DNA of 64,000 nucleotides from Selaginella moellendorffii (taxonomy: Eukaryota > Plantae > Lycopodiophyta), in assembly GCF_000143415.4 (NCBI RefSeq), contig NW_003314370.1:489517-553516 (forward strand), in the 5' to 3' direction. The notes below the pieces were generated by a model. It saw only the letters and a list, made by a program, of their open reading frames with translations. It did not search any database and had not been told where the DNA came from. How positions within the stretch are numbered: position 1 is the stretch's first letter; every line of letters starts with the position of its first letter. A program made the translations under genes and the position numbers. Below, piece by piece: positions 6,295 through 40,056 of this stretch.

Positions 6295-7509
6295 GATCCA
6301 GATTTGGAAAGGAGAGAAAGAAGAAGAACAAAACGAAAGAAATGTGATGGAAGATTTTGTCCTCTAGGAAGAACCAAATTTTACCAGGAGAAGACAAAGA
6401 GCGAACTAATTTCTACTTGAGACGAAGAGACTGCCTGGGGCAAACTTTTATAAGGAAATTTGCCTAAGAAAATGAGTTAAGATTAAAAACTTTAATTTGA
6501 ATACAATTGTGAACTTTAATGCCATGTTGTCATATTACATTGTCAAGTTTTGTCTAGCTCTCTAAATGTAATTATTGATATCCATGTTTAAATTAAAGTA
6601 TAAAGTCAACCATTTCTAAAGAAATTTTCTATATAGTAAATTTTTTTGTGAGTTCAAAACTATAAAGTAAAATAACATATCTCCATTCTTAATATTTGTA
6701 GAAAAATTCAACTGAATTAAAATTAATAGATAGATAAAAGTATTTTACTTTCATAACTCTACATGCATTTTCATTTTTGTTTTTTAACATATCAATAAAA
6801 AATTATTATTAAATAAAATCATTTAATGTACTTTGATTTTTACAAATATAGAAAAAAGACTTCTAGAAACAGGTCCTTAGAAATTTATGAAATAAATTAT
6901 TTACCAGCCTTTCTAATTTAAATTATATAAAACAATTAGATTGAGTTTGGGAAATTTAGTTTATGAGAAGTTTACTATATTTCTTTTTCCTTTTGCCATG
7001 GAAATCCCTTTTTTTATTAAGAAATTACCTTTTTTAGCTTGAAAAGAGAGAAATGAAGTGTATTATATGTACCAGTAACATATAGTTAATACTTTTTAAA
7101 TAACTTATTTCAACATTTATGACTTAGATATTTATAATAAGTATAATTTACTTGAAATGTTTTTTTGAGATTCCAATATATTTTTAAATAGGTTATAACA
7201 TTATACTATATGTAATCCTGTTATAAAGAAGCATCTAATATACCAAGTTTTATATAATGATAGGTTTGTTTATGTGAGAAACCTCCAAGTGAGGATCATC
7301 ATCTCATGTGGGATTTCAAGTGTCGAAGTATGGATTCAGTAAGTAAGAATTATGTTTTGCACTTGAAATTGGGATTGATCAATGGAGATTGATATGGTCA
7401 GTTCACAATTGGCATTTATATAAAATGTCCAAAAAAAATTCCATATCGTTTGAAAACAACGTTGGTAGCATAATATCGTGATAATTGAAGCAGGGTATAA
7501 CCAAATATA

Positions 7510-9238
7510 TTACTTAAGACAATCTGGCAGTGGTGTGTCTGTGAGAGCAAACAGCATCTTGAGGCCAGTCTGCAGATCATGTGGAGGATAGCAGTATGTA
7601 CCAAAGGGAGAAGCTCCACACTCCATCAGCACACTGCAAGTCACTGGCTCGTCGAACAGGCACGCTACACCAAGAGCAGTGTTCACGGGATCCACTTTGG
7701 TGTCGATCACGCTCCGCTCTTGGCACACACGAGCCACTAGGCGGACAATCTCCGGAGGCTGGTCGTCCACAACAAGGCCCAAGGCACAATTCCCCTGGCC
7801 ATCTTGCAGTGTCGGATCTGCTCCAGCTTTCAGCAGGAGCTGCAGCCTCTCCATACAGTTCCTTCCAGATAGCGCATTGTTGAGGGGTAGTATACCTTCA
7901 TACGCCTTGTTCGGAGATAAGCCGAGGCGTAAAAGCATCTCAAGCAGCTCCGGATTCTCTGTTTCGCACAGCTCCTTGGGTGCCAAACTGTTGAGATGAG
8001 TCTGGGAATTGCCGTTATCATCCAAGGCATCCATTACAGCTTGCATGCCATTCACCACCGCGTAGAGATAAGGCCACACTCCACTTCTCGCTGGAAAAAG
8101 AGAAAAACCTTACTATGTATGTCTTTGAACAACTTTGGGAAGAATACCTCTGCCCGTGGCGTTGGCACCATTGTCCACCAGAAACTTGACCAAGTCGAGA
8201 TCAGGAGCCTGGTACTGCAAAGCAGCCAGCAGCGGAGTGTTGCCATGAACAGGGTCGACAAAGTCAAGACTATCCAGCAGAACCACAATCTCATACGCGA
8301 CTTGCGTTCTCCCCTCACTGATACTTTCCACCAGCCGAGTTCGTAGCTCATCCGTTTGAGCTACCAGCAGCGCTGGATCATGCAAAGGGTCCGCCCAGAG
8401 ACTACCGAGGAAGTGCGCAGGATAGAACCTCATGCCACTCAGCCGCGGAGAGTAAGCTGTCATGTCTAAGAATCTGGGAGCTTCAAGTCTGTCCATCTTC
8501 ACTGCCCCCTGTTCATGATCCAAGTATGCCACCAGAACAACCGAGCCCGGGACCACAAACCCGAACGTAGCAGCTTTCGTGAGCTCGGCTTGCCAGGTAA
8601 CTCCACGCTTGGCATCCTCCTCCGACTCGTAGAACTGGATGAGCACGAGAATGCCCACACCCTCAAGAGCCATCTTGCCGGAGCTCATAGCCGACTCACT
8701 GCTCGTATCGAAGCTGCGTTTCTCGGAGATGGCGATCTCAGGGCCTAGCAGTTGTCCGTCACTACACCGGAACCAAGTGAAGGAGCTTGACACGCAGTAG
8801 TCGCACGAACAGCACCGGTTGCGCCTGGAATACGCGAGTAGCTCACTGACGAGCTGGGAAAACGAAAACATACACGGCCTGCGGATCACAAGCCTGCCAT
8901 CCACCATCTTGAAGATCAGCTCGCACCTGCGCGTCATCTCGTGCAGCGGGATCTTCACATCGGGCGGAAGCGCAATCTCGACGATATTGGATGGCTGCTT
9001 CCCGATTTCGATGTGCGATCCAGCAGGAAGCTCGACTTGCTGCCCCCAGAAGCTGTGGGTGCTGCCCTCTCCACAATCCAAGCGAAATTCCTGGCTAGCC
9101 ATGGCGTGACATGAAATTTCGCAAACAGTACACTCAATCGCTCACCTGGGACGGGCCTTCCGTGGCCGCCTTGCGCGGCCTCTGCCTTTTCATTGCCCTA
9201 ACCATAAACCCTAGTCCTTCATCTTCATTTCCCGCCAT
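7510..9238 (-). CDS. Degenerate Uma2-like (PD-(D/E)xK fold) domain fused to C-terminal ankyrin repeats; exons 9238-9146, 9090-8148, 8090-7510
   Basis: GT-AG introns 9145-9091 (55 bp) and 8147-8091 (57 bp) join the ORFs in frame. Ankyrin motifs: GNTPLLAAL..LVKFLVDNGAN, LLLKAGADPTLQDGQGNCAL. The N-terminal half resembles the Uma2 pattern. The start could be 9238, 9205 or 9193. Confidence 0.8.
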
Positions 9239-9360: not shown

Positions 9361-10866
9361 TCATAGTTGCTGCTCCAGGTAGTCCTCTTTGCCGCTAGCT
9401 TTGGGACTGGTAAGATAGCTCGTGATATTGGAGTAAACTCCAGAGACCCATCCTTGCGCCGCCGCTGGAATCCACGAAGGAGAGCTTGGCTGCTGGGAGC
9501 TTCGCAACTTCTCCTCCTCAATGGCCTTGAGCAAGCTCGCTTCCAATCGATAGGCCAGGTACTTCATCGTGGCTGGAGTTCCCTGCTGGACGATCTCCAG
9601 CGGCGGATCCACGAGTGGGTTCTCGTCCAGCTCCAGTGTTTTGATGTTGGTCAGCCTGCCGAAGGAGAGCGGGAGCTCGCGGATCTGGTTGTAGCGGAGG
9701 TCGAGGTGTGTGAGCGAGACCAAGTCGGCCATGGATTCTGGAAGAGCGGTGAGATCGCTGAAGTTACTGCTGGCGTCGAGAGTTTCCAGGCGGGTTAAGT
9801 TGCCGATGGCTCTTGGGAGTGATCTGAGCTTGTTGAAGTGAAGGTCGAGGTGTTTGAGAGTTTTTACCTCGCACAGCGTCGGTGGAAGGTACGTGAGAGA
9901 GTTGAGTTGGAGAGAGAGTCGCTCCAGGGAATCCATTCCTCGTCCAAAGCTCGAGGGGAGATACTCGATCTTGTTAAAGTCGGCATTGAGCTCGATCAAC
10001 GCACTGAAAATCGCGAACTTAGTCATTTGATCTAAAACAAAAGAGAAAAGTTTACCTGCATCCAGAAATCCTCTCTGGAAGCTGCTTTAGCTGGTTCCTG
10101 GAGCAGTTCAAGTACTTGAGGTTCTTCATCAAGCCAATAGAGTCTGGAAGAATTCGAAGACGGTTGGACTGCACCTGGAGCCTTTCGAGATTCGCCAGGC
10201 CAGCAATAGCATCTGGAAGTACCTGAAAAAAACAAAACAACTTAAGCTAGAACCAAGGCAAAAAAATAGCTGAAACTTCTACCTCGATCTGGTTCGTGGA
10301 TAAGTTGAGATCCACCAGCGAAGAAATCCTCCCAATGGATTCCGGGACCAACTGGAGGGACTGGTTGCAAAGATTTAGCTCGGACAATTTTTTCTCCGCG
10401 GCCTCGTCTAGCAGCCGGCTTGCCGCAAGATTCTGCCCTTGCCCCTCTTCCTTCACTGGAACCGAAGAATTCTTCTCGAGAAGAGCCTCGGCATCCTTGA
10501 GCAAATTCCCGTACAAGCGATGGAGCTCATCAAGCTGGAGAATCGCCCTCAACGGCAATCTCTCTCGCTCCGCGGCGTCCCGCGCGGCCTTCTCCTCCTC
10601 AGCCTGATCGATCGAAACAAAGAATTTTGCCCTTGGCCCTGGAGGAAATACAATACCTTAGCCTCAAGATCTTCCAAGGCGATCGACTCCAGAGCTTGCG
10701 CGAGCGACACATTCGACGCGGCGAGCGCCTGGCGCGCGTCCTCAACCTCCTGGGGATCGGGCCGCGGCCCCAGTGCCCGGATTTTCTCGCGAATTTCCGC
10801 CACGTTGAGCAGCGCCATCGCCTCGGGCGTCTTGTACCTCTCGCTTACAACCTCTTCCAATTCCAT
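9361..10866 (-). CDS. PIRL: Plant intracellular Ras-group-related LRR protein (PIRL1/9-like)
   Basis: N-terminal LGPRPDPQEVEDARQAL, acidic coiled segment, tandem LRRs (LPDSIGLMKNLKYLNCSRNQL), NPLVDPP cap and C-terminal DYLEQQL. Confidence 0.9.
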
Positions 10867-11027: not shown

Positions 11028-14000
11028 ATGGCTGTAAGGTTCTTCCCAAATCAAAGAAGAATTTCGCCATTGCAAGACCTTCCATCAACAAGGTATTCTT
11101 CTCTCTTTCTCTCTCATTTTTCTCTTGCTCTTTCTCTTTTCTCATCTTGGATGCATTGTGAAGGAGCCATGAAGCCAAAGACAAAGACTACCAAGTCCTC
11201 AGGATCTACACGAAAATGCGTGACAAGGGCGAGAAGCCGAGCATTTCAATCGTTCTCGCAGCACTCAAGGCATGCAGCAAAACCAGAAACTTGCGAGCTG
11301 GCCGGATCATCCACGCCGATCAGTCAAAGAACAGTGATGAAGAGCTGGAGGTTTTCGTGGCAAACTCGCTCGTAGACATGTACGCCAAGTGTGGGAGCAT
11401 GCTGGAAGCACAGAGAGTCTTCGATCGAATGCCGCGACGTGATGTGATCTCCTGGACTTCTCTCATGTCGGGATACGTGCAAACTGGAAATGGAGAGCTC
11501 GCTTTGGAGCTCTTCGCGTTCCTGCAAGAAGAACAAGGCCTCACTCCCAACGCTCGGACTTTCGTGGCGGCTTTGAGAGCCTGCGCCGATACTGCTGCGA
11601 GAGAAAACTCCATGGAACTTAGCGGGAAACTTGTGAAGCCGGTGTCCTTGGAGAAAGGGATGTTTCTACACTCTCGGGTTGGACAGGAGGAGCTCGGCGC
11701 GGACGTTTTTGTTGCGAGTAGCCTGGTGGAGATGTACTCCAAGTGTGGGAGCTTGGAGGACGCTTACAGGGCCTTTCGGAGGATTGAGAAGCGGGACGTG
11801 GTTTTGTGGAACTCCATGATCATGGGAGCTTCTCAGGGTGGAGATGGCGAGCTTGCGCTGGAGCTCTTCGGCGAGATGCGAAAGGACGGTTTGGTTCCAA
11901 ACTCGAAAACTTTTCAATCGGTGCTAAAGGCTTGTGCTGCTCTTGCAGGGAGAAGAAAATGCTTGGAAGAATGCAAACACATAGCTGATCTTATCTTCAA
12001 GTCTCCACACAAGTCGGACACTGCCGTGTTGAACGCTCTGGTGGACACTTACGTGAAGTGTGGAAGCTTGGCCAGCGGACGCAAGGTGTTTGAGAAAATC
12101 CCGAATCGCGACGTTGTTTCGTGGACTACGCTCATATCTGGATACGCTCAAAGTGGTGACGCTAGCTTGGCTCTAGAGCTCTACGAACGAATGAAGGCCG
12201 AGAAGCTAAGACCAAACGCGAGAACGATGATTGCTGCTGCGAAGGCTTGCACTCAACTTGCAAGAGAAGACGAGAAGGAAATTGGCTTGGAAAAAGGTCG
12301 GGCGATCCACTCGGAGGCAGTAACGGGTGGATTCGAGTCGGATATCTTCGTTGCAAACGCGCTGATCGACATGTATGGAGAGTGTGGGAGCTTGCCGGAA
12401 GCTCGACAGGTTTTCGATAGAATGCCACAGCGTGATATCGTTTCGTGGAACATCATGATTCTGAAGTATGCTTCGAGCAGTGATCCGGGACATGCTTTGG
12501 AGCTCTTTGACAGGCTGAAACAACGAGAAAAAAGACAAGAACAAGGCTTGAAAGCAAATGCTCGAACTTACGTTGCAGCACTCAAGGCTTGCGCTGAGCT
12601 TTCTTGTGGAAGCCACCAAAGAGAAGGAGACGAAGGAGTGGATTTACAAAACAGGAACAGGTGTCTAGAAAAGGCTCGAGAAATTCAATCGCAAGCCGAG
12701 AAGGATGATTTTTCTTGCGATGCTTTTATCGGCAGCTCGCTCGTGGATATATTTGCAAAGTGTGGGAGGCCGGAAGAAGCTCGCCAGGTCCTCGAAAGAA
12801 TGAACAACAGGGATGTGATCTCATGGAGTGCTCTGATTCTGGGATATGTTCACAGTGGAGAAACAAATCTAGCGTTGGAATGCTTCGCTCGGATGCAAGA
12901 AGAAGATGGTTTGAAACCCGACGCTCGAGCTTACGTTGCCGGGATAAAGGCCTGCTGTGCAGGTTTTCGAGCTAAACCGGAGGAGCAGGCAAAGTTTGTG
13001 AGCGCCGGAACAGCGATACACTCTCGGCTTGGTGACTATGAATCGCAAACTTTGGTGGCAAACGCTCTAGTGGATATGTACGCCAACTTTGGAAGGATGG
13101 ACGACGCGAAGAGGGTGTTTGATAGGATGAAGCAGCGAGATCTCATCTCGTGGACGGCATTGATTCTGGGATACGCGAAGAGTGGGAAGAGCGAGCTTGC
13201 ATTGGAGCTCTTTGAGCGCATGCAAAGCGAAGAAGGATTGGAACCGGATGCTAGAACTTTTGTTGTTGCTCTCAAGGCTTGCTCCGAGGCTGTGAGTGGA
13301 AGTGGAGAGAAAATGGCCGAGAAGGAGAAGATTGATGCTTCTTTGAGAGCTTGGTGCCTGGACAAAGGTGCTGCTCTCCACGCTCAAGTTCTGCAAGGCG
13401 GGCACGAGGACGATCTCTTCGTTGCAAATGGTCTGCTCGAGATGTACGTGAAGTGTGGGAGTGTGGGAGACGCTCTTAAAGTTTTCAACAGGATGAAGCA
13501 ACCGGACTTGGCAGCTTGGAACTTGATGATCACAGGTTATGCTCAGAGTCGTGACGAAGCAAGCTTGGCTCTCGAGCTTTTCTCCAGAATGAAAGAGCAA
13601 CGATCGCTACTGCCGGATGCTAGAACTTACGCTGCGGTAGTGAAGGCTTGCACCACTCTCGCGGCACTGGAAACCGGGAGAGAAATCCATGCTGAAAGTC
13701 GCAAGGCGGGACTCGAGAGTGACGAGCTTGTCGCGAGTTCTCTGGTGGATTTCTACGCGAAGTGTGGGAGCATGGCCGAGAGCGAGCAAGTCTTCGAAGC
13801 CATGTCTCGAAAGAACTTGGTAGCGTGGAACGCTCTCATCGCAGGCTATGGCTACCACGGCGACACCGGGAAAGTTTTCTCCCTGTTCGAGAGGATGCAA
13901 GCTTCTAGTTCTCTACAACCAGATGGAGTGACGCTTCTCTGCGTGCTCAACGCATGCAACCACGCGGGGCTCGTCGACAAAGGGAGGGAGATCTTTGAGA

Positions 14001-14359
14001 AGATGCGCTCCTCGTCTAGCAGCTTTGGCGTGGCTCCCGGACTTGGGCACTACACTTGCATGGTCGATCTTCTCGGGAGGAAGAACCATCTCCGGGAAGC
14101 GCTGGCTATGGTGGAAGCGATGCCTATTAGAGCGGACAGGGTGATATGGATGACGGTGCTAGCGGCCGCTTGGAAGTGGAAGGATGTGGAAGTGGCCAGG
14201 ATCGCGTTTGAGGCAGTGGTGGAGCTAGACAGCGAGGATTCGGCAGCTTACTCGCTCATGGCAAACACGTATGCCGCGGCTGGAATGTGGAAAGAAAGCC
14301 ACGAAATACGAAGAAGAATGAAGACGATGGATCATCACTCGAGAGTTCCATCTAGCTGA
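11028..14359 (+). CDS. PLS-class PPR protein with C-terminal E domain and no DYW (organellar RNA editing factor); short exon 1 (11028-11092) probably encodes a transit peptide
   Basis: The 1047-aa ORF has P-L-S repeats (VFVANSLVDMYAKCGS, DVISWT, PDARTFV) and an E-type tail (HYTCMVDLLGR...AYSLMANTYAAAGMW). Intron 11093-11163 joins MAVRFFPNQRRISPLQDLPSTR in frame. Confidence 0.93.
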
Positions 14360-18756: not shown

Positions 18757-19900
18757 ATGGATCTAATCTGGAATGTTGTCACAGCAGGGATCTCTCTGGC
18801 AGCAACCATATGTGTTTGGCAATGGGCTCGCGACTTCCTGTGGAGGTCTCGGCTCCTCCTCCAGGCTTTCAAGCAGCAAGGCGTCTTGGGACCGATCCCA
18901 CGCTTGTTCCTCGGAAACTTGGATCAAATGCGCGAGCTCATGGCAGTAGAAGTTGCCAAGAGTTCCACTGGCGAGATTAGCAACGACAATCATGCTGGCG
19001 TTGTGGCGAAAGTTATTCCCTACTATGCAGCGTGGTCCAGATCATACGGTACGAGATCGATCTTTTCCCAGTCTTCGTGGAATCGTTCGTGATGATTGAA
19101 GCTCGATGAATCTTTGAACATGCGAAACGTTTTTGGTTTGGCTGGGATCACAGCCAAGGCTGATGATAAGCGATCCAGAGCTGATAAAAGAAGTGCTTTG
19201 CGACAAAAGTGGGAGCTTTGACAGAGAACCCGGCCAGCATGCCGCCAGGGATATGGGATTCCGTTGCTGACTATGAACAAGAGATGGTTTCAAAAGCGAA
19301 AGATGGTCTCTTTGGCTTTCCACAGCGAGAAGCTCAAGGTTTCAAAACTTTTAGTTTCTTCAGCTTCTGAATGTTTTCCTTCTTGTTTTCCCTCAGTTGA
19401 TGATCGATGCTATGGTAGCTTGCGTCGAGGAGAACCTCAAGCAGTGGAAGAACCGCTGGACCGGTGGATGTTGCGTTAAAGCTCCGAGACATCACACAGG
19501 ATGTTTTGTGCCGGACGGCTTTTGGGACGAGCTACACTGCAGGGAAGGAAGTTTTCGAGATGCAAATCGAGCAGCAATACATTCACTTGGAGTGGCAAGG
19601 TCAAGTTCATCTCCCTGGTTTTAGGTGCGGTTTTTGTCTCTTTTCTTTTCGTTTTCTTCGCCTTCCTGATAGACTTATTAGATTTCTTCCAACGTCCACC
19701 AATCGACGCAGGTGGACTTTAAAGCAACAAATCGACAGCAAGCTTCGTAAACCGATTGAAGGAGTCGCCATGATCGAGACGAAGATCATCCTTGCGATGA
19801 TCCTACTTAAGTTCACGTTTGAGCTCTCGGGAACTTACGCCCACTCGCCGTTTCAGGGCCAAACAGCCAAAGTTTGGCATGCCGATGAATCTCTCGGCCA
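18757..19900 (+). pseudogene. Pseudogenised tandem copy of the CYP72-clan P450
   Basis: Exon 1 is near-identical to copy 1. Later exons are frameshifted, and the segment equivalent to 17262-17889 (I-helix, ExxR, heme Cys) is deleted. Confidence 0.92.
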
Positions 19901-19948
19901 AAGAAAAATCACACTTTCACAAAACATAGATATATAAGTTTTTCTCTA

Positions 19949-21593
19949 ATGAAAAAAGGAAGATCTTTATCAATGGCGATGGCTATGGCATCGTGCAGTG
20001 GCAGAATCCCAAGTGGTCTTACATTGTCGCGAAGATCCAGGCACAGATTCGTGGCCGCTGCGTCCGAGGATGATTCCAGAGTAGCAATTCAAGAAGAAGC
20101 TTCTTCCGCGATCGACGTTGTCAAGAAAGAATTTCAGGCAAGGAGATACCATGTGGAGAATGACAAAATGTTCGACATATTGGGCGCTTCCTTGGCAGTG
20201 CCGCTTCGTCTGGGAACAGGAGCTCTCGTCCAAGGGTATGAGAAAAAAAAAATTCTCTAATTTGATTTTCTATGCTTGGATATAGCTACAAGGCATCCTT
20301 TGTTCCCAAGGAGCAAGTTCCACCGTCGCAGTACTCGCTCTTTGATTTTGGAGGTAAAAAGTTTTTTTTTTTTCTTATAATCTGTAGAGAGTTTGGTAAT
20401 AAATCAGGACAGAAGCTCGTGGAGACTGCAGAGCTAGGAGCTCGACCGCAACAGCCCATACAAATCTATGAATTCGAAGGGTAATCTTTCGTTTTTTCTT
20501 CTTTCGTTCTTTCATCGCTTACTGATGGTTTCTTTTTTTCCTTAGTTGTCCATTTTGTCGTAAGGTAACTCAGATTGCAAGCGATTGGAAAGGCCTGAAG
20601 AAAAGTGTGTTTGATTTCATAGGTCAGAGAAGCTGCTACGATCCTGGATCTCGACATCTTGTTTTATCCCTGTCCTAAAGACGGTCCAACCTATCGACCC
20701 AAAGCTATCGAACTTGGTGGTAAAAAGCAATTCCCTTACATGGTAAGCTTTGCAAACTTTAAGCTTTCTATCAAATGCTCGTTTTTGTTTTGTTTTTTCG
20801 TCAGGTAGATCCCAACACGGATGTTGCAATGTACGAATCGGATGAAATCATCAAGTACCTTGTAGATAAATACGGTAAATTGTTTTCAAATACCACATAG
20901 ACTTGTTAGTTTATCCTCGATTGTTTTTCCAGGGAATGGGAAGGTGCCTTTTATGCTGTCACTGGGTTTCTTCACGGTAATGTATTGTGTATATATTTTT
21001 TCCACCGGCTTTTCATTTGCTATCAAATTATAACAGACTCTAACAGCAGGATTAGCAATGCTTGGGCGTGCAGGCAAGGTGAACTTTTACGTCTTTCACT
21101 TTGACGATACAAACCAGGTTTTTGTTTTCAAACCAGGGATCCCAATACGTTCCTGCGAGAAAACCAGACAAGCCTCTAAAGATCTGGGCGTACGAGGTGA
21201 ATTGAAAACTCAAAAAAGAAAGAGAGAGCTATATCTTAAAGCTGGATTTTGTGAGCAGCTTTCGCCTTTCTGTAAGATCGCACGAGAAAGGCTGGTTGAA
21301 TTGGAGCTCCCTCACGTTTACTACAAGTAAGTCTCTAGTTTGTGTTTTCTTCTCTCGAGAGCTCTTTTTTAAGTCTCTACTTTACACTGTCCAGTGCCGC
21401 TCGTGGAAGTCCCAAACGAAATTATCTCTTGGAACGGACTGGAATTTTTCAGGTACTCATAAATTCGATACAATGGTGTTGGAATTACTCTTTTGTTTCC
21501 CAGGTTCCTTTCTTAGAAGACCCCAACACCGGCGTGGAGATGTTTGAAAGCTCGGAGATTATCAAGTATCTTAACACAACGTATGCCTTGTAA
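19949..21593 (+). CDS. Plastid GST2N / thioredoxin-fold protein with two GST-N (glutaredoxin-like) domains
   Basis: Transit-like N-terminus; IYEFEG|CPFCRKVRE, GGKKQFPYM|VDPNT...YESDEIIKYL; second domain LSPFCKIARE...QVPFLEDPNTGVEMFESSEIIKYL. The start may be 19949 or a few codons downstream. Confidence 0.88.
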
Positions 21594-37073: not shown

Positions 37074-39807
37074 ATGAACTGACCATTGGGAAGTCCAAGA
37101 CTAGAGTGAATACAGACCGACAAGCAGGGTAGCTTGGTGAAGTGTTCAAGAGTTAGCTCTAGTTCCCCCGGGAGATCGAATGGTCGATGCTCGCAGTCCA
37201 AGTGTGGGTGGCACTACCTACTTGGATACCTGGCGTGGCTCAACGGAACCTCGCTCTAAGCCCATGGCTAGAACACCTAAAGGCAGAAGGCAGGGAGAAT
37301 ACCCATGAGGCTCGCGTAGGGCTATGGTGTTCCAAAATGTTGTCCCAAAGTCCCAGATTGTGGAAAGGAAGAGGAGTAGCTCTTTGGTGTGGTAATCAAG
37401 GACACAGTCACACAATGAGGAAGTCCCAAATGATAGTGGGACTTAGTGGTCGGGCCTATGGGCCTTGATCTAGTGGCAATGTTGGCAAACACGGCCATGG
37501 ACAGAAAGGGACTTGGTGGGGACCAGAATAGAGATATTGGGGAAGGCTGTTCCCCATATTTGTGGGCATCCTAAAGATGCTAAGGAGTGGATCTAGGATG
37601 ATCATTCATGGACGGATGGTCTAGTCGTTGAGAGACGGGATTGCAACACAAGTGGTGTTAGACCACTAATGTGACCAAGGTGAATGGGTATGGCGTAGCG
37701 TAATGAGTTGATATGTTGGTGGTACCTTGGGGTGTCGGTCATGGGATCGGACACGTGGAGCACTTGAACCAAGTGCAAAGGTTAAGTGGCATGGATGCCA
37801 TTCTCGGGGTTAGCAGACCCCAAGTCCTGAATTGGACTTATGGAGGTTGTGAGTGAGACTCTTCCTAGTGATCGGAGAGGGGGTTAGGTGACTAAAGTAG
37901 AATGGAAAAATTAGTCTCTTACAATTTGGTATTGGAGTTGTTCCTTAGTCCGACTTTTATTGATGGCTAAGTATATCACCACTTGTATTGAATTGGAAGG
38001 TCTTAGGTATGGACTTATCCTTAAGGAGTAGCATGTCAAGAAGATATGGCTCTCCACTCAAGTTCATGCATGAACTTGTGCACAATGTGATGGATAGAAA
38101 AGGGCTAGTAAAGGAACAACTTTGGGATCTTGGGAACAATATAAGGGTTTCTTCAGAGAGTTGAGGATGTGATTCAAATAAGCATTTGGCTCAGCAAACT
38201 GGCTAAGGTAGTTATGATAAACAACTATATTTGGGATCACGGGAAAGATAGAGACTCCAGAACAATAAAGGAGTTACAAGATTATCCTCAAATAGTTGAG
38301 GTTGGTGCTCATCAATTTGAGACCAGAATTAATAACCGTGGGAGGTCAAATATAAAAAAGGACACAGGTCCTTGAAATGGTACCTGAGGCTACTTTTTAT
38401 AAATGCTAGAATAAACCCAAGGAGTTGGGGGTGTGCTTAGAGGATGAGTTGGTATTCTCATCATATGGACGGATAGTCCTAAAGGGCAAAAGTAGCCCAT
38501 AGAGAACGGAAAATAATAAAGTGTTGGAGTAACATTTGCAAAGATGGTCTTTATGAGTAAGGCATGAATACACACAATTGTATTCCAGCGAGCTAACACC
38601 TGAAAAATAGGACCTTACGGGTCAGTGGATTAACAAAGTCCATAAATGTGGGATGACTTGAGTAGAGTCAAGAAATGGTCCTAAGGGATTGGTAAAAAAC
38701 ATTTGGACTATGGTGTGTTGTGCCCCATGAAGGTTGGGGAGGATCATAAAATCCAAGTATGAGAATGGTGAGTATCTTATTGATAGCAGAATGTGCCATA
38801 CTAAAGCGGTGGGGAAGGTGTTCCCAGAAGAAAACAACTTTAACATAAAGTTGTGTGTAAACCTTATGGTGCAGTGCTAACGGATAGTTGGTATGAGAAA
38901 GAATTGTAGTGGTTTTGGTAAGGACCTAGACACAAGTAAGAAGTGTCATAAAGGTAGGCTCGTGGAGCTGATGGTGTGGAGACATCGAATGTGCTAAGAC
39001 ATGATGCTTTAAGGTGAGGTGATGGGTTCACGAGAACCCCTTCTCAAAGGAAACCTAATGGAAATGGGAATGGCATAACCTAAGCGGAAGGCATGCAATT
39101 GGAGTGTGGTGACCTAGATAATGATGGAGGTGTGAAAGCATCAACAATGAGTTGTAAGACTTGACAACTATGAGGCAACTAAGCAAAAGGTGCAAAATAA
39201 TCGGTTAAACTAGTAAAAGGTAGCTACCCAAGACTTCTAGCATAAAGAAGTTAAATATACCCGTATAGGGGATAAATTGCTTATGTTGCGATATAGTAAG
39301 TCAATGTCGTAAAAGGGAATGCTCATTGTCAAAGAGGCCATCATTAGGACACCTAAACACTCGAGAACACAAGGAGGTGGTGTTTGGTGTCGCAAGGGCA
39401 ATCCAAGGGACTAAATCCCTAGTGAATGATGGATAAAAGGTGCTATCCAAACGTCGAAGGTTGTGGAGATGGGAGAAGACCATCTACCCGAATTGGACAA
39501 AGCTAAAAATGGAATTTTGGCAAGGCTAGTGATGGGCATATAAAGGCCCATAAGTAGCAACATTAATCCCGGTGTGTGGAATTATAAGGTGACCATACTC
39601 GGATTGAAGAACCACTCCCTAGGCTATCAGGTAGGTTCATCTTTAAGAATACTTGCTAAAGCATGGTAGAAAATGCAAATCTATCCTCCTAGTCTGGAGA
39701 AGAATATCCAAAGGAAATGTATGAGGCCAAAAAGCAAATAGTAATGGGATAAAACCAAACCATAGGAATTAAAGAGCATAACTAAAGGTGAGTTGAGAGT
39801 GGAGAAT
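37074..39807 (+). mobile_element. Heavily decayed second LTR retrotransposon (LTR end at 37923, tRNA-Met-like PBS, internal relics)
   Basis: ...CTCTTACA followed by TTTGGTATTGGAG (degenerate TGGTATCAGAG); purine-rich, stop-ridden internal region; ends abruptly at the LRR fragment. Confidence 0.6.
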
Positions 39808-40056
39808 CTGAGCTCCCTCGACCTCTCGCACAACTCGTTTAGCGGGGAGATCCCTTCGGAGCTTGGCCAGTGTCAAATGCTGGTGAGCTTGGATCTGAGC
39901 TACAACCTTCTGTCCGGAGAAATCCCGTCCTTCCTCGAGAGCTTGTCGCGGCTGGAAGTTCTTTGCTTGCCTGGGAACTCTTTCTCTGGTGGCGTGCCCG
40001 AGTGGATCGTCCGGAGCTCCAGGAGCTCAACCTCGCGGAGAACGATCTCCGGGTGA
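39808..40056 (+). pseudogene. LRR receptor-kinase fragment (copy A, 5'-truncated at the retroelement junction)
   Basis: LSSLDLSHNSFSGEIPSELGQCQMLVSLDLSYNLLSGEIP. Confidence 0.85.

What the first reader, a model, noticed from the sequence alone, without database searches (positions are those of the whole stretch)
7510..9238. Bacterial-type Uma2 (restriction-endonuclease-like) domain fused to ankyrin repeats in a plant gene
Seen in sequence: exon 2 aligns colinearly by eye with the cyanobacterial Uma2/DUF820 pattern. LIFKMVDGRLVIRRP ~ LKFER.AQGELIIMPP; SSSFTWFRCSDGQLLGPEIAISEKRSF ~ DSSTGFKLPNGA.RSPDVSWI..ERW; RLEAPRFLD...RLSGMRFYPAHFL ~ VLQSP.TLSGE.VLPGFVLDL..IW. The catalytic PD..E..K positions look lost (PE, LVLI) and a CCSCDYC cluster is inserted. 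Several ankyrin repeats follow, and a short in-frame first exon adds an NLS-like MKRQRPRK. Established knowledge: Uma2 is a PD-(D/E)xK-fold family expanded in cyanobacteria and not typical of seed plants. Inference: a horizontally acquired, domesticated nucleic-acid-binding or decoy domain with a protein-interaction module.
Basis: partly seen in the sequence, partly recalled or inferred. Interest (0 to 1): 0.8.

Follow-up and report, generated by a model that had tools for sequence, protein, structure and literature searches.

The report
Half-recognisable Uma2-like domain fused to ankyrins
A spikemoss (Selaginella moellendorffii) gene found only in that species joins ankyrin repeats to a domain whose first half resembles bacterial Uma2 restriction-type nucleases, but the catalytic half is unrecognisable, so it is probably a dead nuclease fold reused as a scaffold, and gene transfer from bacteria is not shown.

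Summary
The gene is real. It lies on the minus strand, has three exons and encodes about 538 aa. RNA contigs confirm both introns, and it evolves under purifying selection (dN/dS 0.18-0.28 against a paralogue). It is Selaginella moellendorffii SELMODRAFT_448088. Only two paralogues were found among 5.8 billion and 1.84 billion proteins.

The ankyrin repeats are confirmed, though they are degenerate.

The Uma2 claim is partly supported:
- Pfam and HMMER see nothing, and two AlphaFold runs failed (pLDDT about 30).
The score is 29.0, P 1.5e-4, probability 51%. None of 300-420 natural windows and none of 40 shuffles of that fragment reached the real score.
- The signal grew as the profile became more diverse.
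- The ESM Atlas model of the paralogue has Uma2, type IIS and Mrr_cat endonuclease clusters among its nearest folds, all at TM below 0.5.
- The C-terminal half, where the (D/E)xK motif should be, shows no similarity.

Horizontal transfer cannot be tested because no alignable relatives exist. Other notes of this scan report Uma2-like genes elsewhere in this genome, including one with ankyrin repeats that is probably the paralogue. I did not test them.

The parts
9146..9238 (-). Exon 1, a short basic N-terminal peptide containing MKRQRPRK. In-frame ATGs lie at 9238, 9205 and 9193.
   Evidence: The frame is open from 9238. RNA contigs reach only 9192-9197, which covers the ATG at 9193. The 25 nt ATGAAAAGGCAGAGGCCGCGCAAGG are identical in paralogue locus L090.
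9091..9145 (-). Intron 1 (55 nt, GT..AG). It is sometimes retained, and it contains the alternative start ATG at 9102 (MASQEF...).
   Evidence: Spliced in runs X2 and X7, retained in X1. The paralogue P0002 is annotated from the homologous MAS... start, and the acceptor AG is TG there.
8148..9090 (-). Exon 2: the N-terminal domain plus the first ankyrin repeat.
8686..8928 (-). Uma2-like first half, exon-2 residues 55-135: beta-hairpin ELIF..DGRLVIRRP, a helix, two strands, then PE at 8737-8742 in place of PD.
   Evidence: hhalign gives 29.0, probability 51%, P 1.5e-4 against Uma2 positions 28-97. Natural windows reached at most 18.0 and the reversed profile gave 12.5. The register is the same without either cyanobacterial subfamily.
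8356..8673 (-). Second half of the N-terminal domain, exon-2 residues 140-245. It is the part best conserved among paralogues and has no detectable similarity to Uma2 or to anything else.
   Evidence: The invariant columns cluster here. hhalign scores are at background. Pfam and 1.84 billion representatives give nothing.
8091..8147 (-). Intron 2 (57 nt, GT..AG).
   Evidence: Skipped by contigs of all four runs. The position is conserved in paralogue L090.
7510..8090 (-). Exon 3: the remaining degenerate ankyrin repeats and the stop codon (7510-7512). The whole ankyrin region is 8355-8148 plus 8090-7513.
   Evidence: Pfam Ank_2, Ank_3 and Ank_4 hits. Beyond the paralogues there are only generic ankyrin relatives. 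The transcript 3' end lies near 7451-7481.

Best explanation
This is a gene so far found only in Selaginella moellendorffii, and it is expressed and under selection. Its product has three parts.

1. A short basic peptide that looks like a nuclear localisation signal. It is present only when intron 1 is spliced out.
2. An alpha/beta domain of about 190 residues. Its first half descends from the N-terminal half of a Uma2-type (PD-(D/E)xK, restriction-endonuclease-like) domain. Its second half, where the metal-binding (D/E)xK residues should sit, has diverged beyond recognition.
3. About five or six degenerate ankyrin repeats.

The likeliest working mode is a catalytically dead nuclease-fold module, possibly still able to bind nucleic acid or a ligand, tethered to a protein-protein interaction module. 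That would make it an adaptor rather than an enzyme.

Shown: the gene structure, its expression, purifying selection, the ankyrin repeats and the similarity of the first half-domain. Inferred: the fold of the whole domain, loss of catalysis, nuclear targeting and the adaptor function.
For: Gene and expression. The frame is open, and both introns are confirmed by RNA contigs from several studies. Against the paralogue, dN/dS is 0.28 for the N-domain and 0.18 for the ankyrin part, at dS about 0.5.

Sequence similarity of exon-2 residues 55-135 to Uma2.
- First profile: 23.2, P 0.0019, 0 of 420 natural windows reached it.
- More diverse profile: 29.0, P 1.5e-4, probability 51%, 0 of 300 natural windows reached even 23 (maximum 18.0).
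- Global mode, half against half: 31.1, natural maximum 8.2.
- The register is the same for each paralogue alone and when either cyanobacterial subfamily is removed. The reversed profile scores at background.

Structure. The ESM Atlas model of paralogue P0002, residues 60-262, has among its nearest folds a PF05685 Uma2 cluster (TM 0.41/0.44, 113 residues aligned, spanning both halves), a type IIS endonuclease fragment (0.40/0.40) and Mrr_cat (0.33/0.58). The order of secondary-structure elements in both low-confidence AlphaFold models is strand-strand, helix, strand-strand, strand, helix, strand-strand. From established knowledge of the PD-(D/E)xK core, this fits the Uma2 topology.

Ankyrin. 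Pfam hits.
Against: - Pfam has no Uma2 hit at E<=10.
- My own Uma2 HMM, run with all filters off, scores -1.8 bits and aligns elsewhere.
- The exhaustive HMMER profile search finds only the gene's own cluster.
- The C-terminal half, normally the best conserved part of Uma2, shows no similarity.
- All Atlas TM-scores are below 0.5, and non-nuclease alpha/beta folds (ribokinase-like, DHH, JAB) score about as well.
- AlphaFold gave pLDDT 30-32 twice, so the fold is not established.
- Eight non-cyanobacterial Uma2 sequences alone give a background score.
Confidence: 0.55

Rival explanations
1. The N-terminal domain is a lineage-specific orphan domain of some other fold, old or newly arisen. Its resemblance to Uma2 is a chance match of a common hairpin-helix-strand pattern.
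For: No significant hit appears in Pfam, PDB sequences, 5.8 billion clustered proteins or 1.84 billion representatives. The C-terminal half has no similarity. hhalign probability is only 5-51%, depending on the profile and the fragment. Atlas neighbours are all below TM 0.5 and are mixed in fold. The Atlas search by sequence features found nothing.
Against: The score is a clear outlier against more than 700 natural windows. Only one of 150 whole-domain shuffles reached the first-profile score. The score rises as the Uma2 profile improves and keeps one register across sub-profiles and paralogues. Three of ten structural-neighbour rows are restriction-endonuclease folds, including Uma2 itself.
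Confidence: 0.33
2. The domain is a working Uma2-type nuclease, and the protein is an ankyrin-guided endonuclease.
For: The acidic residue of the PD motif is kept as E118 in both full-length paralogues. The invariant Q152, E155, E157, E158, D159 and K161 in the second half could in principle supply metal ligands and the lysine. The domain is under purifying selection.
Against: The (D/E)xK or E..S block of Uma2 cannot be aligned. In the low-stringency alignment the invariant glutamate falls on a leucine. No part of the second half scores above background.
Confidence: 0.07
3. The gene arose by recent horizontal transfer of a cyanobacterial Uma2 gene into Selaginella, followed by fusion to ankyrin repeats.
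For: The half-domain signal comes from cyanobacterial Uma2 subfamilies and not from eight non-cyanobacterial sequences. Steczkiewicz et al. 2012 list PF05685 as a bacterial family with multiple transfers (PMC3424549).
Against: Identity is about 20% over 65 residues and the other half is unrecognisable. That argues for long divergence, not recent transfer. The gene has spliceosomal introns, ordinary plant neighbours and three paralogues among ordinary plant genes. No tree can be built. Untested notes from this scan report an older eukaryotic Uma2-like family in lycophytes, ferns and fungi, which would be a nearer source.
Confidence: 0.1

Closest known systems
Uma2 / DUF820 / TT1808 family (Pfam PF05685; structures 1WDJ and 3OT2 as listed in PMC3424549)
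   Same: The order and register of the N-terminal hairpin (E-L-x-x-G-x-L-V-x-x-P), the helix that follows, two strands and the P-(D/E) turn all match. The domain length is similar. The Atlas fold neighbour spans the whole domain.
   Different: No HMM-level match. D becomes E in the PD motif. The second half (E..S block, D...K...Y...G..eYW helix and strand, C-terminal LPGF strand) is not recognisable. A Cys-rich stretch of about 10 residues and a Ser-rich loop are inserted. The protein is eukaryotic, spliced and fused to ankyrin repeats, whereas every bacterial Uma2 gene fetched here was a standalone gene of about 155-230 aa.
Other Uma2-like genes of Selaginella moellendorffii reported by this scan (standalone and PHD-finger fusions)
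   Same: Same genome. They show the same idea of a restriction-fold domain fused to a eukaryotic interaction or reader module. One note describes a Uma2-like plus ankyrin gene on another scaffold, which is probably paralogue P0002.
   Different: I could not fetch those sequences, so no relationship was tested. The exhaustive HMMER search with this domain did not retrieve them, so if they are related they are distant.
Ankyrin-plus-nuclease proteins such as ANKLE1/LEM-3 (ankyrin + LEM + GIY-YIG) and RNase L (ankyrin + pseudokinase + KEN). From general knowledge, not tested here.
   Same: The architecture follows the same logic: ankyrin repeats attached to a nuclease-fold domain.
   Different: The nuclease folds differ, the domain order is reversed, and there is no sequence relationship. 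Here the nuclease-like part probably lacks catalytic residues.
DUF506 (PF04720), the plant-specific PD-(D/E)xK family listed in PMC3424549
   Same: It is a restriction-fold family native to plants.
   Different: There is no Pfam hit to PF04720 even at E<=10.

Membership tests
Uma2 (PF05685) | Match to the Pfam family HMM at or above the gathering score (27 bits) | tested here: not met
   No PF05685 hit at E<=1 or E<=10 for exon 2, the N-domain or the paralogue. Genuine Nostoc Uma2 proteins score 93-121 bits in the same tool.
Uma2 (PF05685) | Profile-profile similarity over the N-terminal half (hairpin, helix, strands 1-2, PD) | tested here: met
   hhalign gives 29.0, P 1.5e-4, probability 51%. 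Global mode gives 31.1 against a natural maximum of 8.2. The register is stable.
Uma2 (PF05685) | Profile-profile similarity over the C-terminal, catalytic half (E..S block, D...K...Y...G helix, following strands) | tested here: not met
   Scores are 9.7-12.9 in local mode and 3.6 in global mode, equal to background and in the wrong register.
Uma2 (PF05685) | Conserved acidic and lysine catalytic residues of the PD-(D/E)xK site | tested here: not met
   PD is PE in both full-length paralogues. The invariant glutamate of the E..S block has no alignable counterpart and falls on Leu in the permissive alignment.
Uma2 (PF05685) | Restriction-endonuclease-like alpha/beta fold | tested here: inconclusive
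   AlphaFold pLDDT was 30-32, so Foldseek was meaningless. The ESM Atlas model of the paralogue has a Uma2 cluster at TM 0.41/0.44, type IIS at 0.40/0.40 and Mrr_cat at 0.33/0.58, all below 0.5.
Ankyrin repeat (Pfam clan Ank) | Matches to the Ank repeat HMMs at their gathering scores, in tandem | tested here: met
   Ank_3 scores 23.2 against a cut-off of 22.3, Ank_4 23.0 against 22.7, and Ank_2 27.0 against 27.3. A further repeat lies at the end of exon 2. Precomputed Pfam for P0001-P0003 lists four Ank families. Weak generic ankyrin relatives reach E 2e-10.

The most novel reading that the evidence does not exclude
Selaginella has domesticated a Uma2-type restriction-fold domain into a catalytically dead module, with its second half remodelled, and fused it to ankyrin repeats. 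Alternative splicing adds or removes a nuclear-targeting peptide. Together with the PHD-finger fusions noted elsewhere in this genome, this would point to a lycophyte-specific radiation of bacterial-type nuclease folds into eukaryotic chromatin or signalling adaptors.
Probability: 0.3. Interest if true: 0.65.

Novelty: new variant of a known kind. Interest (0 to 1): 0.45.

Why it matters
If the fold assignment holds, this is a rare case of a bacterial-type Uma2 nuclease fold kept under selection in a land plant after losing its recognisable catalytic half, and joined to a protein-interaction module. It would add a data point on how selfish or defence nuclease folds are recycled in eukaryotes. 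It would also give a function-testable member of a Selaginella-specific expansion.

If the assignment does not hold, the gene is simply an expressed ankyrin protein, known only from S. moellendorffii, with an orphan domain. That is of local interest only.

Tried and rejected
- **Pfam.** Scans of exon 2, the N-domain, a trimmed core and the paralogue at E<=1 and E<=10 returned only weak ankyrin hits.
- **PDB sequence search.** Only ankyrin hits and sub-threshold RING noise at residues 54-97, E 0.15. I rejected a RING or zinc-finger reading because only four of the cysteines are conserved in the paralogue and the spacing does not fit.
- **Word search.** The N-domain search found only three S. 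moellendorffii proteins.
- **Exhaustive profile search.** Against 1.84 billion representatives it found only the gene's own cluster.
- **ESM Atlas by features.** Nothing usable.
- **AlphaFold2.** The three-sequence alignments (245 aa, then a 190-aa core) gave pLDDT 30.3 and 32.1. Foldseek against the PDB with the second model gave no match, as expected.
- **BLASTP against one Nostoc Uma2.**
- **My own Uma2 HMM with filters off.** -1.8 bits, aligned to a different, non-collinear segment, PSNIVEIALPPD.
- **Six-frame scan.** Scanning the window and both paralogue loci with that HMM found no other Uma2-like gene.
- **Widening the Uma2 set from viral contigs.** This failed because the alignment was too diverse to give a search pattern.
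- **Not done on principle.** I did not fold the domain with Uma2 sequences added to its alignment, because that would force the Uma2 fold and prove nothing.
- **Dead lead.** The Bromus paper that 'mentions Uma2' uses UMA2 as a population label.
- **Not reachable.** I could not obtain the other Selaginella Uma2-like proteins noted by this scan, so the intermediate-sequence test was not run.

Full report
**1. What is there**

The finding lies on the minus strand. Joining 9238-9146, 9090-8148 and 8090-7510 gives an uninterrupted 538-codon frame. The introns are 55 and 57 nt long, with GT..AG ends.

The word search identifies the product as Selaginella moellendorffii SELMODRAFT_448088 (P0001). GenBank annotates it from an internal Met, as 456 aa. 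There are two paralogues in the same species: P0002 (522 aa, 75% identical over exon 2) and P0003 (341 aa).

The neighbours are ordinary plant nuclear genes. An LRR gene lies at 9361-10026 (-) and a PPR-E gene at 11216-14359 (+). The paralogues sit among SecY, AP2, DnaJ, SAP18 and bHLH genes. Contamination is therefore excluded.

**2. Expression and gene model**

Twenty public runs from nine studies hold part of the stretch. I laid the contigs of four runs on it.
- Intron 2 (8091-8147) is skipped in all four runs.
- Intron 1 (9091-9145) is skipped in two runs (X2, X7) and retained in one (X1).
- Contigs end at 9192-9197 on the 5' side and at 7451-7481 on the 3' side.

The ATG at 9193 (MKRQRPRK...) is therefore transcribed. 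The ATG at 9238 is not covered.

When intron 1 is retained, the exon-1 frame stops inside the intron. The long frame then starts at ATG 9102 (MASQEF...), which is the start annotated for paralogue P0002.

In the paralogue locus, the 25 nt that encode MKRQRPRK are identical. The homologous acceptor AG reads TG, however, so the in-frame splice is not conserved. The NLS-like exon is thus real here, but it may be an isoform-specific or upstream-ORF element.

**3. Selection**

Codon comparison with paralogue locus L090 gives dS of about 0.5. dN/dS is 0.28 for the N-terminal domain and 0.18 for the ankyrin part. Against L091 the values are 0.25 and 0.26. Both parts are constrained coding sequence.

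P0003 lacks everything before residue 168 of the full 538-aa protein. It keeps only the second half of the N-domain plus the ankyrin repeats.

**4. Ankyrin repeats**

Pfam finds Ank_3 and Ank_4 just above their cut-offs and Ank_2 just below, plus one repeat at the end of exon 2. By eye there are about five or six degenerate repeats. Searching the ankyrin region alone returns the three paralogues, then only generic ankyrin proteins at E of 2e-10 or weaker.

**5. The N-terminal domain: standard tests**

None of the standard tests recognises the domain.
- Pfam gives nothing at E<=10.
- PDB sequences give nothing.
- The Atlas feature search gives nothing.
- A profile search of 1.84 billion representative proteins returns only the gene's own cluster.
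- AlphaFold2 with the three available sequences gave pLDDT 30.3 and 32.1. The Foldseek search was empty and carries no information.

The family is, as far as these databases go, confined to S. moellendorffii.

**6. A direct test of the Uma2 hypothesis**

I fetched genuine Uma2 genes and confirmed two of them by Pfam at 93-121 bits. They came from three sources:
- cyanobacterial and other bacterial plasmids;
- one species-level genome scan;
- the word search.

I then ran hhalign against the alignment of the three paralogues.

*First profile (31 sequences).*
- The whole domain scored 23.2 (P 0.0084, probability 4.8%).
- Column shuffles averaged 13.5 +/- 2.7, and 1 of 150 reached the real score.
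- Seventy-three natural ORF windows reached at most 21.9.

*Splitting the domain.*
- Residues 55-135 carry the whole signal: 23.2, P 0.0019. None of 40 shuffles and none of 420 natural windows reached it (natural maximum 21.5).
- Residues 140-245 score 11-13, which is the shuffle mean, and they align in the wrong register.

*More diverse, better balanced profile (27 sequences, including Clostridium, Bacillus, Streptomyces and Riemerella).*
- The whole-domain score rose to 26.6.
- The fragment score rose to 29.0 (P 1.5e-4, probability 51%). The natural maximum was 18.0 over 300 windows.

*Global mode, half against half.*
- The first half scores 31.1, against a natural maximum of 8.2.
- The second half scores 3.6, against a natural mean of 3.3.

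*Robustness.*
- The register is the same for each paralogue alone (16.2 and 23.3).
- It is the same without the Tolypothrix-like subfamily (20.4) and without the Nostoc-like subfamily (25.2).
- A reversed profile gives 12.5.
- Eight non-cyanobacterial sequences alone give 12.8, which is background.

**7. Independent structural hint**

The ESM Atlas holds a model of paralogue P0002 (pTM 0.43, pLDDT 0.61). For residues 60-262, its nearest clusters include:
- a PF05685 Uma2 cluster (TM 0.41/0.44, 113 residues aligned, query 77-226, so both halves);
- a 'type IIS restriction endonuclease' fragment (0.40/0.40);
- an Mrr_cat cluster (0.33/0.58).

Ribokinase-like, DHH and JAB folds appear beside them at similar scores. 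All TM values are below 0.5, so this is a hint and not a fold assignment. Still, three restriction-fold rows out of ten is not what an arbitrary alpha/beta domain should give, and the evidence is independent of the sequence test.

The order of secondary-structure elements in both weak AlphaFold models is strand-strand, helix, strand-strand, strand, helix, strand-strand. From established knowledge of the PD-(D/E)xK core, this is what a Uma2 domain would show.

**8. Reading**

The third block and the whole catalytic half are not supported.

The best explanation (about 0.55) is a strongly diverged Uma2-type domain. Its N-terminal half is still recognisable, and its second half has been remodelled. 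PD has become PE. The E..S / (D/E)xK block cannot be aligned, and in the permissive alignment the invariant Glu meets Leu. The domain is probably not a nuclease, and together with the ankyrin repeats it likely acts as an adaptor.

The main rival (about 0.33) is an orphan domain with a chance match.
- P 1.5e-4 is only E of about 3 against about 20,000 families.
- The family was chosen after the match was seen.
- The part that is normally best conserved is silent.

**9. Origin**

Horizontal transfer cannot be tested, because no sequence is close enough for a tree. The low identity (about 20% over 65 residues), the introns and the paralogue spread argue against a recent event.

Notes from other windows of this scan report Uma2-like genes in this genome, some fused to PHD fingers, and one Uma2-like plus ankyrin gene on another scaffold that is probably P0002. 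I could not fetch those sequences, so I treat the notes as untested leads. They raise the prior for a Uma2 origin and suggest an internal eukaryotic source rather than direct cyanobacterial transfer.

**10. Verdict**

- Observation: partly confirmed.
- Interpretation: partly supported.
- Novelty: a new variant of a known kind, if the fold holds.
- Interest: moderate (0.45).

Noticed in passing
window 8929-9000 (exon-2 residues 31-54, KQPSNIVEIALPPDVKIPLHEM): This segment lies just upstream of the hairpin. It weakly resembles the Uma2 catalytic-strand block (P-d-l-v-v-E-v-v-s-P...), with hhalign scores of 15-21 and P 0.03-0.04, but it is out of order with respect to the main match. It could be chance, or a relic of a second or permuted Uma2 unit.
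   Followed up: partly
L091:9992-11154 (paralogue P0003, SELMODRAFT_408628): This is a truncated paralogue. It starts at residue 168 of the full 538-aa protein, so it keeps only the second half of the N-domain (the part unlike Uma2) plus the ankyrin repeats. No upstream remnant was found by tblastn.
   Followed up: partly
L090:9917-9941 vs window 9193-9169: The 25 nt that encode MKRQRPRK are identical between paralogues whose coding dS is about 0.5. The intron-1 acceptor AG is TG in the paralogue. This suggests a conserved upstream ORF or regulatory element rather than a conserved coding exon.
   Followed up: partly
window 9361-10026 (-) and further upstream: This is the last exon of an LRR protein (Pfam LRR_8 and LRR_4, E 1e-17). 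Its 3' end lies about 120-170 nt from the start of the ankyrin gene. Its contigs are far deeper (depth 480 against 14 in run X6).
   Followed up: no
window 11216-14359 (+): An intronless 1047-aa PPR protein with an E motif (PPR_2, E 1.6e-114).
   Followed up: no
L083:13198-17372 and 19872-20462 (Pseudanabaena sp. PCC 7367 plasmid pPSE7367.01): Seven annotated Uma2 genes lie here, two of them short fragments on either side of an IS630 copy. The array is embedded in a phycobilisome gene cluster on a plasmid. An eighth Uma2 gene lies at 39287-39982.
   Followed up: no
L090:15004-16971 (-): A 655-aa called gene without any Pfam family, three genes downstream of paralogue P0002.
   Followed up: no
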